63,997 nucleotides of DNA from Octopus bimaculoides (lineage: Eukaryota), in contig NC_068989.1 in NCBI RefSeq assembly GCF_001194135.2, positions 16,914,269 through 16,978,265 of the forward strand. The letters run 5' to 3'. Both the position numbers and the translations under genes were made by a program. Below the pieces are notes generated by a model. The model ran no database searches. It was not told the origin of the DNA and saw only the letters and a list, made by a program, of their open reading frames with translations. This document shows positions 1,537 to 46,972 of the stretch, one piece after another. Numbering within the stretch: the first letter of the stretch is position 1; the number at the start of each line of letters is the position of its first letter.

Positions 1537-3945
1537 CTTTGATGGTAGAAATCATCAGGTCTTGACTCGAAGAATTCATTGAGGCACATTTTTAGTTTCA
1601 TATTGTTGTTGAATGAAATACATTAGGCTGTTGGAGAGTGACTGTTAAAGTTAAAAATCCAAAGGTGCTATATCAAGAGAATATGGTAGGCACAGTAGAG
1701 CCTCCCAAATGAGGTCTTCAATAACATTTTTGGTCAAATTAGCAATGTGGGACAAGTGTTGTCTTATTTTACATGACTTCAAAGGTGCAAAGTGAGAGAA
1801 TTATTTTTCCACAGTAGTGACAGCAACAACACTGCTTGTAACTAAGGATGTTTGTAGCATGCAAATGTAAACAAGCACACAGATACATACACACACAGGT
1901 ATTCAACAGGCTTCTTTCAGTTTTCATCTGCCAAATTCATTCACAAAGCTTTAAACGGCCTTGCCCAAGGTACTATGTAGTGGAACTAAACCCAAAACCA
2001 TGTGGTGGGGAAGTGAATCACTTAACCACATTGCTATACCTGCTCTTATATGTATATATATCTTCATCGTTTAATGTCCACTTTCCATACCGGCATGGGT
2101 TGGACAGTTTGACTATAAACAGGTCAGCTGCACCAGGTTCCAATCTGATTTGGCAAGGTTTTTATGGCTTGATTCCCTTCCTAACGCCAACTGAGTGTAG
2201 TGGGTGTTTTTTACATGCCATTAACCTGACATGGGTTTGACAGGTTTACACAAGCACAGTATATCACCAAAGGTCTTGGTCACCTGTCACTGCCTCCATG
2301 AGACCCAACACTTGCATGGTGCTTTTTACATTCCAAGTGTACAGGTGCCAGTCATATGGTACTGGCATCAGCCATGACTACAATTTCACTTGACTCGACA
2401 GGTCTTCACAAGCACAGCATATCGCCCAGTGCTTGAAGGTTGCTTTTAACAGGCCAGTTATGCAACACTGGCATCGGCCACAACTATGATCTCAATATTG
2501 GCAGTGGCCACAACTACGATCTCATATATGTGTGTGTGAATATGACAATTGTATAAGAGTTACTCTGCAGTTAATACAAATCAAAAGTGTGCTGTCAGAT
2601 ATTCCTAAGTAATATGCATGTTATATGACCTCAAAGGTCATGTACAGAGCAAATTACAAGGTAGTAGTAATAGTAGTAGTATGAGGGCATGCACTATAAC
2701 AATATGTTGCATCCACCATTTGTTGGTGATTCCTTACCCTTGGCAGATGATGCCTTTGCACTACTCAGTCCTCACTAAATTACAGCAGGGATAAACCTTT
2801 CTCTACTGCAATTCATAGCTTGCAATTAGGAATTGGTATCAAATTTTTACCTGTGATATTTCCATCTTGCAGATGCTTATTAATTCAGTAATGATGCATG
2901 TAGACTTGACCTTATCAGAAGCAAAGCAGTAAATAGAAAATGCGTTAATAGGCAATCTCCAAACTAACATGGATGTCATCATGTCAGAGTAACTAATGAA
3001 AATATTGAGTCGTCTGTGAACCCACTGAATTTAACCTAATTAATGAAGCAATATGACCTCCATTACAAAACCCAAAATGCTGGAGTGCTCTAACAGCATC
3101 AAATGTATCAAGATGCAGGACTCACTATCTGTATAATTGTGTAAGTTATACATGAAGATTATTTTCTTTAATATTTTATTATAGTGTTTTCATCAGTGAA
3201 TCAAATTTAAAAAGAAAATTCAATTCAACTGCCCTGAAGATATCCAACAAATATAAGATTTTTAATTTACACACAAATGTGAATGTTTTGTCACAAATTT
3301 CAGTAATAAAATTATACATAAATATCATTCATTTTTTGCCTTTTTACTTCTATGTAGAGAATATTTTTAAAAAATCATCTCAATATTTTCCTCGTTTATA
3401 TTTATATATGTGGTTGGTGAATGAGAATAATTTCTCACATCTGCAAGGTTTTATTACTTTGTGTTACTACTAATAATTAATGAGTTCATGTGAATGACTT
3501 ATAACATGAATAGGTTTTTCTCCAGGGTGTATTTGTGGATTATATGACAAGAATGATTACCAGCTGATAATTTTTGCCTCCAATCTACTTTCAGCTGTGA
3601 GTTACTGGTTACTCATATTTCACACTGATAAAAGTTATATTTTCTGCTCAACTGTGGATTACAAGAGAAGATTTACTTCACACTGAAAGATTCCCCATAT
3701 ATTTCACACTGACATAGCTCTGTTTTTCTTTATTTTGTATGTGTTCATTTATTAACTACAAGTTAATAAATTCACAAATAAGAATTTCTTGAGGATTTTA
3801 GTGAAAGAATTTCTCTCAAATGAAAGCATATTTATAGACTACAAGATGAAAATTTGAAGAGAATGATTTCAAAAATATTTCACCAAGATGGTCTCCAATG
3901 CATACTTGATGGACTAAAAATTCAGATTTGTAAGAGAAAGATTTT

Positions 3946-5526
3946 TCACATTTCACAGTCAAAAGGTTCCTCTTCAGTATGTATTTTTTGGTGTGCTTTT
4001 AAGTAACCATTAGAAACAAAAGATTTCCCACACACTTCACAATAAAATGGTTTTTCTCCAGTGTGACTACGTATGTGGATAACAAGATTTGATTTATTAA
4101 CAAACGACTTTCCACATATTTCACACTGATATGGTTTTTCTCCAGAGTGCATTCTTTTGTGTATTGTTAACTGACCATTAGTACTAAACGATTTCCCGCA
4201 CATCGGACAGTGGAAGGGTTTCTCTCCAGTATGTGTTCTTTTATGTATTTGCAAGAGACCATTAGAGATAAAAGTTTTCCCGCATATTTCACAATGATAA
4301 GGTTTGTCTCCAGTGTGTGTCACTTTATGTGTTTTTAGGAGACCATTTGTCACAAAAGATTTACCACATATTTCACACCCAAAAGGTTTCTCTCCAGTAT
4401 GTATTCTTCTGTGAGTTGCTAAATAACTACTAGAGACAAAAAATTTCCTACATATTTCACAATAATATGGCTTTTCACCAGTGTGTATTCTTTTGTGCCT
4501 TGTTAAATCACTACTGCTGATAAAAGATTTCCCACAAGTTTCACAGCACTGTAGTTGTTCCCCAGTGTGACTACGTGTGTGAACTGTAAGCTTAGAATTA
4601 GAGATAAAAGATCTCCCGCATATTTCACAGCGATATGGCTGTTCTCCTGTGTGACAGCGTATGTGCAATGTAAGCTTAGAATTCGTGACAAAAGATTTCC
4701 CACACACTTCACAGTGGTACGGTTTTTCTCCAGTGTGTAACCTTTTGTGAAGCACAAGACTAGATTTAACAGTAAATGATTTTCCGCATATTTCACAGCT
4801 GAAGGGATTTTCTCCAGTGTGTATTCTTCTGTGTATTTTTAAAAGATCGTTAGTAATAAACGATTTACCACATATTTCACAGTTGTAAGGTTTTTCTCCA
4901 GTGTGTCTACGTTTATGGATAACAAGATTCGAATTCTTAGCATAAAATTTCCCACATATTTCACAATGGTGTAGTTTTTCTCCAGTGTGTATTCTTACGT
5001 GTGTTGTTAACTTACAGTTAGTGGTAAATGATTTTCCACATATTTCGCAATTATAAGGTTTTTCTCCCGTGTGTATTTTTTTGTGCCTGGTTAAATCACT
5101 ATTATTAGCAAAAGATTTCCCACATATTTCACAGGAATAAGGTCTTTCGCCAGTATGTATTCTTTTGTGAGTTGTTAAATTACTATTCTGGACAAAGGAT
5201 CTCCCGCATATCCCACAGTGGAAAGGTTTCTCTCCAGTGTGTATCCGTTTGTGACTGGTTAAATTACTGCTATATAGAAACGATTTTCCACACATTTCAC
5301 AGTGATAAGGTTTTTCTGTGTTATGTATTTCGTTGTGAGTAAAGGTTTCATGTTCTGAAGAGAACACTTTCTTACACATCTCAAAGTGATATTCAGCAGT
5401 ATTTCTGCATAATGTTCTCTGTTTAGTAAATGTTGCACTACGTAAAGGTTTTTCATCCTTGTTTCTCTGTATAACTGTATCTATAATGGTAGAAACAGTT
5501 GTGTGATTAACATCTTCCATATTCAT
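3946..5526 (-). CDS. C2H2 (Kruppel-type) tandem zinc-finger protein, 526 aa, 16 intact fingers plus a degenerate N-terminal finger and a truncated last finger
   Basis: Uninterrupted ORF with repeated CxxC-x12-HxxxH units joined by TGEKP-type linkers; no KRAB or other recognisable N-terminal domain; possible acceptor near 5601 implies a non-coding upstream exon. Confidence 0.95.
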
Positions 5527-7806: not shown

Positions 7807-20144
<12,338 letters not shown>

Positions 20145-43200: not shown

Positions 43201-46200
43201 NNNNNNNNNNNNNNNNNNNNNNNNNNNNNNNNNNNNNNNNNNNNNNNNNNNNNNNNNNNNNNNNNNNNNNNNNNNNNNNNNNNNNNNNNNNNNNNNNNNN
43301 NNNNNNNNNNNNNNNNNNNNNNNNNNNNNNNATACTATTGGGTACACAAGAACTGGTATAATTGCTCACGTGTTATTGACTCTCTTTCTATCTGCTGTAA
43401 TAACTCACATACACACACATGTATCACTCACATACATACTTTTCTTTGTATGAGGGCCTGTCTTTGATTATGTTATTATATGTCACATTCACACTCTCAC
43501 ACAGACATACATCTTTAACGCTACAATAAATATTTCTGTTATTCATCTTATACGGTTGTGGTCTTTCATTACTGGTCATCTATGTTATCGTCGTATAACA
43601 TATCATGTATATCATCATTGATATATATAATTTTGTGTTCGACCGTGTGACATGTTTAAATAAAAGGAGTCCTCTGTTTTTCCATTCGTCACCATTTCTC
43701 CTTTTTGAGTTCGCACGGTCGTTCCTTACAAATGTATCAATAAACGACAACTACACCGTACACGGATCAATTTTAAATTTCGGAGAAGCATTTAATCACG
43801 ATAAACCGAAAGGATCAAACTTCACATGGGATGGTTGTCTAGACGTAACAACTGCACCACAACTCGGAGTAGAAGGAAATGTACACGGTGAATCGGTAGG
43901 CGAAACGAGAAAAAGAAAACGACAGTTCTGGAAAGAAGATTTAAATTACACAGAATACGGAGACTGATCACCATAACCTAGTTAAAGACGCAAACGGCAA
44001 TATGGTTCCCGCCAGTGGAAACATGGTTACGGCAAACAGAACAGTCATTAACAAAGTCCTATATACATCGGAAGACTCGCCAGAAATGATACTCATCAAC
44101 GTGCCACAGATCGTCAGACCCACGGTAGCAGCGCACAACAATACTTTGCATTCGATATCACGTACACCATAACACTAGACGCATACTACGAAGCTATGCA
44201 ACATCCGCAAAAAGTAGCCACCATATGCCACAAGGCAGCTGAGAACACTACTTATCCAGGATTTGAATATAATCTATTCTGCGCTACACCACCTTGCAGA
44301 CACTTGAACAATCTCCCGCCAAAAGGGAAACGGCACGGGAGAACTACTTACATAGATGCGGATTCAGCTGGCGACAAGGCACTTAAAAATTGTTCAGGAC
44401 ACTTTGTAAACAAGTAAGTAGACAGCGCTTGCCTGTCACTTGCTAATCACCTTCCAGGCCCTAAACACTATAAATACACACAGGCAACAGTGACAGCCAG
44501 CAGTCATGGACACACCAGTCAACAACTTCAACATGAGCGAGAACGACGACAAAAATACATTCGACCAGGCAGTGAAGTCGGAAGAGTTGAAACCATACAC
44601 GTGGGTGTACAGACTCAGAGATGAGAACGAGATAACTTGGGATGAGACGATCACCATCAGCGCAGCGACAGACACCTTCACACACGACTACACGCCGCAG
44701 ACAAATTATTTCATGAACATTCTATCGAAACATCCCAACATAACGATATTTCACAAGCGTTCCATTTCGGCGATAAAACATTGCTACGACAGACCACACT
44801 TTCACGTAATATCATGGCATAAAGACCATCCGACAAACCTACATAGCTTTTCACAACTTAAAAATTTGTTAAAAAAACGACCTCGGAAAACTGTACAACA
44901 TGGCAGCTATGAAGCTATTCACACCATATGGATTCGCAAACTACCTAAACAAAGACAGCTCCATCAGATGGGTAGTATCTGCTGACAACATCAAAACACT
45001 CGGACAAAAGATGATGTATGAAAAGCTCACATGCAAATCATTGAATACAACAACAAATTACTCACAGGAATCAGACGAAGACAAACAACTCATTAACAAC
45101 AAGACTGTAAGAGGATCTAAATATGATTTTATTAAGAAAATCATGCNNNNNNNNNNNNNNNNNNNNNNNNNNNNNNNNNNNNNNNNNNNNNNNNNNNNNN
45201 NNNNNNNNNNNNNNNNNNNNNNNNNNNNNNNNNNNNNNNNNCCAACATAGAAGCACTTTCTACACCGATCTGGGAACAGATTAGGCAAAAAAAAGACTAT
45301 TTTCAATCAAATGCAAACAATTACCATAATATCCAAAGATCGTTAGACATTTACGAAGAATGGCTAACACACTACAATATTGACGCTGATAATTTCTCCA
45401 AACACACATTCGAGGTTTGTCATAAGATAAACCCGAAAGTTAACGGGCTGCACATAACCGGAGTTTCCAATTCTGGGAAGAGCTATATACTACGTTCGAT
45501 AAGAAACGGATTGATCAACTGTGGACGCATGCGATGTCAGGCATCGGACAACTTTACATTTGGTTCCTGCGTAGACAAAACAATCATTTATACTGACAAA
45601 ATTATTATGGATATCAAAGCAGCTCCTCTTTAAACTGAAAAACTATGAAATACTGAGACAAAACAATATGCCAAGATGAATCTGCAGAAATGCCAATATG
45701 ATGAGATATAATTTTCAACAACAGATACTTACGTTTTCACATTTTGCAGTGTTAGGGCATCCTTAAGTGCTTGTGATTGGTCTGGGTCCAAGTCTTTCCT
45801 GTAGTTATTTCATTATAAACAACAAAAGACAAATATATTACTCAACAAGCTTCAAACTATTTCACTTTCATATGAAATTATTTCTACAAAACTAAATTCT
45901 CTGTTTAAATATTATTTGAATAAATTATGAAGGTAATTTTTTTTTTATATAAGTTACTTTTAAATCTTTAAGTATGACAACTTATTTCTTCTGTATTGTA
46001 GTGGCATAAAGGGAGTCAAATCAGAAGAAGGTGTTGTGGTGATCATTCATTTACCAAGATTCATCATCATCATCATCATCGTTTAACGTCCGCTTTCCAT
46101 GCTAGCATGGGTTGGACGATTTGACTGAGGACTGGTGAAACCGGATGGCAACACCAGGCTCCAGTCTGATTTGGCAGAGTTTCTACAGCTGGATGCCCTT

Positions 46201-46972
46201 CCTAACGCCAACCACTCAGAGAGTGTAGTGGGTGCTTTTACGTGTCACCCGCACGATACGTGTCAACAGAAATTTATTTGTCAAATCTATTTCAGATACA
46301 TACTTAATGCCGTCCTGTTAAATGTAGAGGGAGATATTCTAAACCCTTCAGAGATATTCTAAACCCTTAACATCAATTTTTATTAGAGAAAAAAAAAACA
46401 AAAAATCAGTTTTTGCTCTAAAATCACCTAAAAACACCTTTAAAAAGTGCCAAAACTATAAAATCCATTAACTTCAATTGCAACTTGATTTAACGGAAGT
46501 TAAATGTAACAGAAGTTAATTAGTCCGATAATGATTTCCAAAGTTAACTTAAAAGTTAAATTGTTAACGAAAATGTTTACTTCATTAATTAATTACAGGT
46601 GCATGAGTGGCTGTGTGGTAAGTAGCTTGCTTACCAACCACATGGTTCTGGGTTCAGTCCCACTGCTTGTCACCTTGGGTAAGTGTCTTCTACTGTAGCC
46701 TTGGGCCAACCAAAGCCTTGTGAGTGAATTTGGTAGACGGAAACTGAAAGAAGCCNNNNNNNNNNNNNNNNNNNNNNNNNNNNNNNNNNNNNNNNNNNNN
46801 NNNNNNNNNNNNNNNNNNNNNNNNNNNNNNNNNNNNNNNNNNNNNNNNNNNNNNNNNNNNNNNNNNNNNNNNNNNNNNNNNNNNNNNNNNNNNNNNNNNN
46901 NNNNNNNNNNNNNNNNNNNNNNNNNNNNNNNNNNNNNNNNNNNNNNNNNNNNNNNNNNNNNNNNNNNNNNNN

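What the first reader, a model, noticed from the sequence alone, without database searches (positions are those of the whole stretch)
43605..45633. Capsid-like ORF lies upstream of Rep on the same strand: permuted order pointing to a circular parvo-like genome
Seen: a frameshifted ORF of roughly 250 codons ends at 44417 and the Rep starts only 88 nt later at 44506, with no long terminal hairpins between them. Its C-terminal PEMILINVPQIVRP-GSSAQQYFAFDITYTITLDAY looks like the final beta-H/beta-I strands of a parvoviral jelly roll. Established: linear monosense parvoviruses run NS then VP between hairpin telomeres. Inference: VP then short stem-loop then NS fits a circular ssDNA virus with parvovirus-type proteins, or a deleted concatemer. 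This is the best candidate for an undescribed system here.
Basis: partly seen in the sequence, partly recalled or inferred. Interest (0 to 1): 0.82.

Follow-up and report, generated by a model that had tools for sequence, protein, structure and literature searches.

The report
Parvovirus fossil with capsid gene first
This is a broken fragment of a parvovirus buried in an animal (apparently cephalopod) genome. Its capsid gene really does sit in front of the replication gene, a rarely reported gene order that turns out to be the normal layout of a whole lineage of linear, hairpin-ended parvoviruses, not a sign of a circular virus.

Summary
Window 43725-44417 holds the last ~230 codons of a parvoviral VP. 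An 88-nt spacer (44418-44505) with a TATA box follows. Then, on the same strand, comes an NS1 with HUH, YxxK and Walker A motifs, cut off at Walker B (~45603). The copy is a dead endogenous viral element: truncated at both ends, three frameshifts, one N gap inside NS1.

The VP-to-NS order is genuine. At least eight independent cephalopod loci show it, including the cuttlefish Acanthosepion pharaonis. These copies diverged under purifying selection (synonymous sites saturated, pN 0.22-0.28). Intact ~4-kb metagenomic relatives show the same order, and their upstream ORF matches solved parvovirus capsids.

The genome is not circular, and the order is not a concatemer artefact:
- The spacer has no significant fold.
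- No locus shows NS followed by VP.
- Hairpins or palindromes lie at the outer ends (left of VP in the cuttlefish copy, right of NS in two relatives).
- Full-length contigs have no head-tail overlap.

A 2024 review says NS is always on the left. One 2022 virome paper noted VP upstream of NS in two goose-derived genomes. I rate this a new variant of a known kind, of moderate interest.

The parts
43725..44417 (+). Remnant of the capsid (VP) gene: the last ~230 codons, through the natural TAA stop at 44415-44417. It is 5'-truncated, lacking the PLA2 domain and the first part of the shell domain, and is broken by two frameshifts with no internal stop codons. Homology may begin a few codons earlier (43710).
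   Evidence: tblastn against the VP core ORF of L002 (E 7e-26), against P0002 (E 7e-45) and against the L009 VP ORF, residues 28-277 (E 1e-19). P0002 lies in L002 downstream of a PF08398 PLA2 domain (E 8.8e-11) on the same strand.
44136..44165 (+). Most conserved C-terminal VP block (QQYFAFDITY).
   Evidence: The block is conserved in L001, L002, L003 and L009. The same stretch aligns to the capsid ORF of L016 (BLASTP E 0.002). The strand assignment was not verified.
44418..44505 (+). VP-NS intergenic spacer (88 nt) carrying a TATA box (TATAAATA, 44469-44476) about 30 nt upstream of the NS1 ATG. This is the inferred internal NS promoter. It has no significant secondary structure.
   Evidence: A TATA-like word at the same relative position occurs in six copies (alignment A2). 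Fold z-scores are +0.1 to -1.4 in four copies.
44506..45603 (+). Remnant of the NS1 (Rep) gene, running from its ATG to Walker B. Motifs present: HUH (HFHVIS, 44797-44814), active-site Tyr motif (YLNK, 44942-44953), Walker A (GVSNSGKS, 45460-45483) and Walker B (IIYTD, 45583-45597). It is broken by one frameshift in the nuclease domain and interrupted by the N gap, and its 3' end is missing (helicase motifs B' and C and the C-terminal ~150 residues).
   Evidence: Pfam Parvo_NS1 E 3.7e-4, 20.0 bits, equal to the cutoff. P0001 is 59% identical (E 1.5e-37). P0005 and P0006 are 72-77% identical over the helicase part. The relatives' helicase matches AAV Rep40/68 (E 4.5e-7).
45147..45241 (.). Assembly gap inside NS1, in the linker between the nuclease and helicase domains. 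Judged from homologues, about 48 codons are missing.
   Evidence: Anchor-motif spacing in P0006, P0016 and P0004 is 55 residues, of which 7 are kept in the window.
45597..45695 (+). Host interspersed repeat that abuts and ends the element at its 3' edge.
   Evidence: 71% identity to window 10489-10601 on the minus strand (E 2.6e-10). No NS or VP homology lies further downstream in the window.

Best explanation
Window ~43725-45603 is a dead endogenous viral element. It is a 1.9-kb internal fragment of a parvovirus genome that entered the germ line of the host (apparently a cephalopod) and has since decayed.

The fragment preserves the virus's own internal junction: end of VP, a short spacer holding the NS promoter, then the start of NS1.

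The donor virus belonged to a lineage whose linear, hairpin-ended, single-sense genome runs: left hairpin, VP, NS1, right hairpin. This is the reverse of the canonical NS-then-VP order.

**Shown:**
- The identity of both genes.
- The conservation of the order and of the TATA-bearing spacer across independent, selectively constrained copies.
- The same order in intact ~4-kb relatives that end in palindromes.

**Inferred:**
- VP is transcribed from a left-end promoter and NS1 from the internal TATA promoter.
- Replication is by NS1-driven rolling-hairpin synthesis, as in other Parvoviridae.
- The window copy itself does nothing today.
For: **Gene identities.**
- The NS1 helicase fragment hits Pfam Parvo_NS1. 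The same region of L001 scores 55.5 bits, E 5.4e-15.
- HUH, Tyr and Walker A/B motifs can be read directly.
- The VP remnant is homologous to P0002 and the L002 ORFs. These continue upstream into a PF08398 PLA2 domain with the YxGPG and HD motifs.

**The order is lineage-wide.**
- VP then NS on one strand is found in the window, L001, L002, L003 (Acanthosepion pharaonis, GCA_903632075.3), L008, L009/L010, L011/L012 and L013.
- Their flanks are unrelated.

**The copies diverged as viruses, not as duplicated pseudogenes.** Window versus L001 and L002 gives pS 0.74-0.87 (saturated) against pN 0.22-0.28.

**The spacer.** It carries a conserved TATA box and no structure.

**Intact relatives show the same order.**
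- L014, L016/L021, L017/L018 and L019 are 3.5-4.2 kb. Each has a 434-452-aa ORF directly followed by a 610-704-codon NS frame.
- The profile of that upstream ORF hits solved capsids: PmMDV 6wh3 (E 2e-7), PstDV 3n7x (E 2.7e-4) and 9nek (E 4.6e-3).
- That capsid profile finds the cephalopod VP frames as its top six hits among 1872 open frames, in collinear positions.

**The ends are hairpins.**
- L003 has a hairpin at 4804-4907, ~100 nt before the VP ATG (dG -37 kcal/mol, z -8.6). The L009 contig begins exactly after the homologous position.
- L018 has a right-end hairpin (34-nt perfect arms, z -12.9).
- L021 has a 72-nt palindrome after NS (z -10.9).
- L017 nt 5-22 is the exact reverse complement of L018 3117-3134.
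- No full-length contig has a head-tail overlap.
Against: - The cephalopod VP core has no direct hit to Pfam or PDB capsids. Both AlphaFold models were uninformative (pLDDT 41 and 35). Its capsid identity therefore rests on the PLA2 domain, its size and position, and weak collinear similarity to a capsid-positive clade.
- Only one cephalopod copy (L003) shows an end hairpin. None shows a right-end hairpin.
- The ~4-kb relatives share only ~32% helicase identity with the cephalopod clade. Their being one VP-first lineage is inferred, not shown by a phylogeny.
- The left ends of the ~4-kb contigs look incomplete.
- L020 shows that circular or tandem forms exist in the group.
- The host species of the window was not identified.
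Confidence: 0.8

Rival explanations
1. The donor was a circular ssDNA virus with parvovirus-type VP and NS genes. VP-spacer-NS would then be one of its two intergenic junctions.
For: - No right-end hairpin was found in any cephalopod copy.
- L020 is a 2470-nt unit with a 127-nt head-tail overlap, so it is circular or tandem.
- The left ends of the ~4-kb contigs are not obviously hairpinned.
Against: - All eight or more cephalopod loci are VP then NS and none is NS then VP. Random linearisation of a circle should give both permutations.
- Strong hairpins or palindromes lie at the outer ends, with inverted complementarity between left and right termini.
- Full-length contigs from the same assembly project as L020 lack the 127-nt overlap.
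- L020 itself lacks both termini and parts of both genes, so it is a deletion derivative.
- The spacer has no origin-like stem-loop.
Confidence: 0.07
2. The donor had the canonical NS-then-VP order. The window would then preserve the junction of a head-to-tail concatemer from which the telomeres were deleted.
For: - Head-to-tail junction forms do occur in this group (L020).
- From general knowledge, integrated dependoparvovirus genomes are often head-to-tail arrays.
Against: - No VP lies downstream of NS in L009 (2.6 kb) or L003 (8 kb), and no NS lies upstream of VP in L003 (5 kb).
- The junction, with a TATA box at the same place, is kept in copies whose synonymous sites are saturated.
- Intact ~4-kb contigs have VP abutting NS and palindromes outside.
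Confidence: 0.03
3. The upstream ORF is a PLA2-bearing accessory protein rather than the capsid, as in the megaparvovirus-like lineage (PLA2 protein, unknown protein, NS1, VP). The real VP would lie downstream of NS and would be lost from all copies.
For: - That gene order exists in another parvovirus lineage (PMC13426907).
- The cephalopod ORF has no direct capsid hit in Pfam or the PDB.
Against: - The DNA downstream of NS is unrelated between five loci.
- The ORF is ~570-600 codons, the size of a VP1.
- It shows collinear, though weak, similarity in two separate blocks to an ORF family that hits solved capsids.
- The ~4-kb relatives have no room for another gene after NS.
Confidence: 0.07
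4. The feature is a host gene, a domesticated viral gene or a transposon, not a viral fossil.
For: Many copies exist in cephalopod data: 48 helicase clusters.
Against: - The window copy is truncated at both ends and frameshifted.
- Other copies carry stops or frameshifts too.
- There are no terminal repeats of transposon type.
- Both genes are parvoviral.
Confidence: 0.03

Closest known systems
Endogenous parvoviral elements of invertebrates (for example, the parvovirus-related sequences of François et al. 2016, PMC5013282, which include marine molluscs branching outside known genera)
   Same: Germ-line fragments of NS1 and VP genes carrying stops and frameshifts, flanked by host repeats. A mollusc host, and an NS1 that fits no established genus.
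   Different: That paper does not mention cephalopods or gene order. Here the element keeps a VP-to-NS junction that canonical genomes do not have.
Goose-cloaca parvovirus genomes MT138329 and MT138334 (Shan et al. 2022, PMC9001828)
   Same: [quoted passage not shown] This is the only report of that order I found.
   Different: Those genomes are over 7 kb and carry an extra transglutaminase-like ORF. The units here are ~3.7-4.2 kb with two genes.
Unclassified Parvoviridae genomes from metagenomes: Turdus hortulorum parvoviridae sp. (QTE03882.1), Turdus pallidus and Motacilla cinerea parvoviridae sp., and Pot worm parvo-like virus 2 (WPR17604.1)
   Same: They are the nearest named NS1 relatives of the cephalopod helicase profile (E ~1e-35 to 1e-29), with 36% helicase identity to P0060.
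   Different: Their gene order could not be read with the tools at hand.
Penaeus monodon metallodensovirus (capsid 6wh3) and Penaeus stylirostris densovirus / IHHNV (capsid 3n7x)
   Same: They are the best solved-structure matches of the capsid ORF that precedes NS in the ~4-kb relatives. They have small single-sense genomes and capsids without PLA2, like those relatives.
   Different: They follow the canonical layout as the 2024 review states it for all parvoviruses (NS left, VP right); I did not check it for these two viruses individually. The similarity covers only ~55 residues. The cephalopod VP, unlike these, carries a PLA2 domain.
Canonical single-sense Parvoviridae (Parvovirinae, Hamavirinae)
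   Same: An HUH plus SF3 NS1, a VP1 with an N-terminal PLA2 (Parvovirinae), terminal hairpins, a ~4-kb linear genome and both genes on one strand.
   Different: The gene order is reversed. A 2024 review states that all parvoviruses encode NS on the left-hand side and VP on the right-hand side (PMC11357303).

Membership tests
Parvoviridae (as source of the element) | NS1 with an SF3 helicase domain of parvovirus type | tested here: met
   The window fragment hits PF01057 at E 3.7e-4 and 20.0 bits, equal to the cutoff. Relatives score 55.5 bits. AAV Rep40/68 matches at E 4.5e-7. Walker A and B are readable.
Parvoviridae (as source of the element) | NS1 N-terminal HUH endonuclease with motif II (HuH) and motif III (active-site Tyr) | tested here: inconclusive
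   HFHVIS and YLNK are present and conserved in P0001 and L002. There is no Pfam hit to the N-terminal domain, and the AlphaFold model had pLDDT 35.
Parvoviridae (as source of the element) | Capsid protein VP with a jelly-roll shell domain | tested here: inconclusive
   There is no direct Pfam or PDB hit for the cephalopod VP. It shows weak collinear similarity to a clade whose VP hits 6wh3, 3n7x and 9nek. The model of P0002 was unusable.
Parvoviridae (as source of the element) | VP1 N-terminal phospholipase A2 domain (Parvovirinae and Densovirinae) | tested here: met
   PF08398 is found in L002 (E 8.8e-11) and L009 (E 3.5e-8), with tblastn traces in L003 and L013. It is absent from the window copy, which is 5'-truncated.
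Parvoviridae (as source of the element) | Linear genome ending in palindromic hairpins | tested here: inconclusive
   Cephalopod clade: one left hairpin (L003) and no right one. The ~4-kb relatives have right-end palindromes and inverted terminal words. The physical ends of virion DNA cannot be tested here.
Parvoviridae (as source of the element) | Canonical layout: NS cassette left, VP cassette right | tested here: not met
   VP precedes NS on the same strand in every locus examined. The review's statement is in PMC11357303.
Circular Rep-encoding ssDNA viruses (CRESS-DNA type) | Circular genome | tested here: not met
   No full-length contig has a head-tail overlap, and the ends carry palindromes. 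Only the deleted L020 is circular or tandem.
Circular Rep-encoding ssDNA viruses (CRESS-DNA type) | Origin stem-loop in an intergenic region next to rep | tested here: not met
   Spacer fold z-scores are +0.1 to -1.4 in four copies, and no stem is conserved.
Endogenous viral element | Viral genes inside host DNA, disrupted and bounded by host sequence | tested here: met
   The window has 36% GC, microsatellites and SINE-like repeats. The element is truncated at both ends and frameshifted. A host repeat lies at the 3' edge. A related copy lies inside an 849-kb cuttlefish scaffold.

The most novel reading that the evidence does not exclude
The cephalopod elements and the ~4-kb metagenomic contigs may represent an undescribed, possibly subfamily-level, group of Parvoviridae. 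In it the single-sense genome would be organised left hairpin, VP, internal promoter, NS1, right hairpin. One branch of the group carries a VP1 PLA2 domain and has repeatedly colonised cephalopod germ lines. If so, gene order in Parvoviridae is not fixed, and the textbook rule that NS is always on the left is wrong for a whole lineage, not just for two odd goose-derived genomes.
Probability: 0.55. Interest if true: 0.65.

Novelty: new variant of a known kind. Interest (0 to 1): 0.55.

Why it matters
**For the field.** Parvovirus genome maps, annotation pipelines and taxonomic descriptions assume that NS is on the left and VP on the right. A lineage with the reverse order would have a different layout of control elements. 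The capsid promoter would sit at the genome end and the replication-gene promoter inside the genome. The origin next to the NS gene would be the right-hand one. That bears on how transcription timing and packaging polarity evolved in the family.

**For hosts.** The finding adds cephalopods to the hosts with a record of parvovirus endogenisation. It also supplies dated-in-principle fossils for a lineage that is otherwise known only from metagenomes.

**For the scan.** The window copy is an ordinary dead viral fossil. The interest lies in the lineage it points to, not in any activity of this locus.

Tried and rejected
- **Second copy in the window:** none by blastn or tblastx or by tblastn with VP and NS queries from relatives.
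- **Pfam on the window's VP pieces:** nothing.
- **AlphaFold:** the VP C-terminal protein P0002 gave pLDDT 41 and the NS1 N-terminal protein P0001 gave pLDDT 35. Both are unusable, so I ran no fold search.
- **Cephalopod VP profile against PDB sequences:** no capsid hit.
- **IMG/VR scans** with P0062, A3 and A6: nothing. The first metagenome scan found nothing; the second gave L019-L021.
- **Spacer stem-loop as an origin:** rejected.
- **Right-end hairpin in cephalopod loci:** none found.
- **Literature:** no paper on cephalopod parvoviral elements. The sample accession was not found. The PmMDV paper (PMC7443866) is not held, so I could not read its gene map.
- **Conserved frameshift in VP as programmed frameshifting or an intron:** rejected. 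The shifts lie at different places in different copies, and L009 reads through in one frame.
- **Bacterial-type promoter scan of the spacer**: not meaningful for a eukaryotic virus.
Full report
**1. What is in the window**

The window looks like animal DNA. It has 36% GC, eight N gaps, microsatellites and interspersed repeats.

Between ~43725 and ~45603 on the + strand lie two gene remnants. The first ends at a TAA stop (44415-44417). The second starts at an ATG (44506). The 88 nt between them carry TATAAATA (44469-44476).

The second gene reads as a parvovirus NS1:
- HUH motif HFHVIS (44797-44814).
- Tyr motif YLNK (44942-44953).
- Walker A GVSNSGKS (45460-45483).
- Walker B IIYTD (45583-45597).

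Its helicase piece hits Pfam Parvo_NS1 exactly at the cutoff (E 3.7e-4, 20.0 bits). From 45597 onwards the sequence is a host repeat that also occurs at 10489-10601 on the minus strand. NS1 is therefore cut off at Walker B. No second copy exists in the window.

**2. State of the copy**

- VP remnant: 5'-truncated, two frameshifts, no internal stops.
- NS1 remnant: one frameshift in the nuclease domain, one assembly gap, and a 3' truncation that removes helicase motifs B' and C and the C-terminal region.

The N gap sits in the linker between the nuclease and helicase domains. The two flanks align collinearly to P0006, P0016 and P0004. These proteins have 55 residues between the anchor motifs, of which the window keeps 7. 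About 48 codons are therefore unread, where 95 N are written. Frame continuity across the gap cannot be decided.

**3. The upstream ORF is the end of a capsid gene**

Its last 96 codons found P0002 (E 3.7e-35). P0002 lies on a 2.8-kb contig (L002). In that contig it is preceded, on the same strand, by a 255-codon ORF and by an ORF with a parvoviral VP1 phospholipase A2 domain (PF08398, E 8.8e-11). It is followed after ~90 nt by an NS1. The window's remnant aligns to the last ~100 codons of the 255-codon ORF and to all of P0002.

Direct capsid evidence for the cephalopod protein is thin. There is no Pfam or PDB sequence hit, and the AlphaFold model was useless. The PLA2 domain, the ~570-600-codon size and the links described in section 6 make VP the best reading.

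**4. The order VP then NS is conserved, and was conserved while the virus was alive**

A helicase-profile search returned 48 relatives. All but one come from assemblies of sequencing runs. The exception is from the cuttlefish Acanthosepion pharaonis.

tblastn maps show VP then NS on one strand in the window, L001, L002, L003 (cuttlefish scaffold), L008, L009/L010, L011/L012 and L013. Flanks are unrelated between loci. The one exception is the ~200 nt just upstream of VP shared by L003 and L009.

Nothing VP-like follows NS in 2.6 kb (L009) or 8 kb (L003). Nothing NS-like precedes VP in 5 kb (L003).

Between the window and L001 or L002, synonymous sites are saturated (pS 0.74-0.87) while pN is 0.22-0.28. 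The copies therefore diverged under purifying selection on both genes. This means they diverged as viruses, and they represent separate insertions rather than decayed duplicates of one rearranged insertion.

**5. The spacer**

In six copies the spacer carries a TATA-like word ~25-35 nt before the NS1 ATG. Several copies also carry AATAAA just before it. It has no fold beyond chance (z +0.1, +0.3, +0.4 and -1.4). I read it as the internal NS promoter, which is an inference.

**6. More distant, apparently intact relatives have the same layout**

A search of 1.84 billion representative proteins with the helicase profile gave 1398 hits. The best full-length NS1s lie on 3.5-4.2-kb contigs. L014, L016/L021, L017/L018 and L019 each carry a 434-452-codon ORF. 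It is directly followed on the same strand by a 610-704-codon NS frame that opens where the first ORF stops.

A profile of that first ORF matches solved parvovirus capsids:
- Penaeus monodon metallodensovirus 6wh3 (E 2e-7).
- Penaeus stylirostris densovirus 3n7x (E 2.7e-4).
- 9nek (E 4.6e-3).

It also gives near-cutoff Pfam IHHNV_capsid hits.

The same profile, run against 1872 open frames from all cephalopod loci, puts cephalopod VP frames in its top six places, in two collinear blocks. Three further points agree with this:
- hhalign gives E 0.005 for the first block.
- BLASTP gives E 0.002 for the second block.

Helicase identity between the cephalopod clade and these contigs is ~32%. It is ~36% to the named Turdus hortulorum parvoviridae sp.. 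The groups are therefore distant relatives within a poorly charted part of the family.

**7. Linear or circular**

Evidence for hairpinned, linear genomes:
- In the cuttlefish copy, a 104-nt hairpin (42-nt arms, dG -37 kcal/mol, z -8.6) lies ~100 nt before the VP ATG. It carries TGACGTC words.
- The L009 contig starts exactly at the position after that hairpin. A graph assembler would be expected to break there.
- L018 ends in a hairpin with perfect 34-nt arms ~390 nt after NS (z -12.9).
- L021 has a 72-nt palindrome just after NS near its end (z -10.9).
- The first bases of L017 are the exact reverse complement of 18 nt inside the L018 hairpin.
- The first 11 nt of L021 are the reverse complement of its last bases. 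I read this from the sequences printed.
- None of the full-length contigs has a head-tail overlap.

The only circular or tandem object is L020. It is a 2470-nt unit with a 127-nt overlap, and it lacks both termini and parts of both genes. It is a deletion derivative.

Taken together, this favours a linear, probably homotelomeric genome with VP on the left. It argues against both a circle and a concatemer origin for the VP-NS junction.

Caveats: only one cephalopod copy shows a hairpin, and the left ends of the ~4-kb contigs look incomplete.

**8. Comparison with what is known**

- A 2024 review states that all parvoviruses encode NS on the left-hand side and VP on the right (PMC11357303).
- The only report of the reverse order that I found is a remark on two genomes over 7 kb from goose cloacal swabs (MT138329 and MT138334; PMC9001828).
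- A 2026 paper describes a lineage with a PLA2 protein and an unknown protein upstream of NS1, but with VP still downstream (PMC13426907). I treated this as a rival reading in section 9.
- I found no paper on cephalopod parvoviral elements. My literature search covered open-access texts only.

**9. Verdict**

The gene identities are right. The permuted order is genuine and of lineage-wide significance. The circular-genome and concatemer readings are not supported.

The rival reading from section 8 (an upstream PLA2 accessory protein, with VP downstream) I judge unlikely, for three reasons:
- Downstream DNA is not conserved between loci.
- The ~4-kb relatives have no room after NS.
- The upstream ORF family hits solved capsids.

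The locus itself is a dead fossil. I rate it a new variant of a known kind, interest 0.55.

Operators' rule on my notes: my first notebook entry lists the bounds of the open reading frames as the ORF tool printed them. This report gives only whole-gene bounds and counts of breaks.

Noticed in passing
L020:1-2597 (JACSEB010000851.1): The first 127 nt equal the last 127 nt, giving a 2470-nt circular or tandemly repeated unit. It is made of a partial VP followed by a partial NS of a relative of L019 (75% nt identity), and both termini are missing. It looks like a defective head-to-tail or circular derivative.
   Followed up: partly
L014:3996-4162; L015:2363-2529; L017:3397-3529; L018:2660-2792: The 8-mer TCTTACCT recurs 4-5 times at ~40-nt spacing between the NS stop and the right end in two different viruses. 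Its complement AGGTAAGA resembles a splice donor. Function unknown.
   Followed up: no
L021:130-270 and 3955-3972; L018:3077-3085; L014:384-392, 3801-3809 and 3870-3878: CCCTAC/GTAGGG words cluster at both genome ends in inverted orientation. They are candidate NS1-binding repeats near the origins.
   Followed up: no
window 46651-46666, plus 7935, 19481, 24586, 51723 and 58541: A SINE-like word (GGTTCAGTCCCACTGC, up to 2 mismatches) occurs six times in the window against 0.04 expected. One copy lies ~1 kb downstream of the element. Together with CAT-type (CATCAT…) microsatellite repeats, this marks host repeat-rich DNA.
   Followed up: no
L003:8484-8822: In the cuttlefish scaffold, the annotated 'Parvovirus non-structural protein 1' gene (P0043) reads through the end of NS1 homology into ~110 further codons. 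These have no counterpart in other copies, so this is probably flank read as coding sequence.
   Followed up: no
L004-L007 (SRR29271461-78): The same NS helicase locus was recovered from four sequencing runs at over 99% identity, flanks included. No VP or NS N-terminal homology lies upstream, so this copy may be 5'-truncated or rearranged.
   Followed up: no
L016:1768-2247, L014:1871-2500, L017:1746-2501: An overlapping ORF of ~160-250 codons in another frame covers the start of the NS frame in the ~4-kb relatives. It is conserved at E 1e-5 to 1e-15 between them and looks like an NS2-type accessory gene.
   Followed up: no
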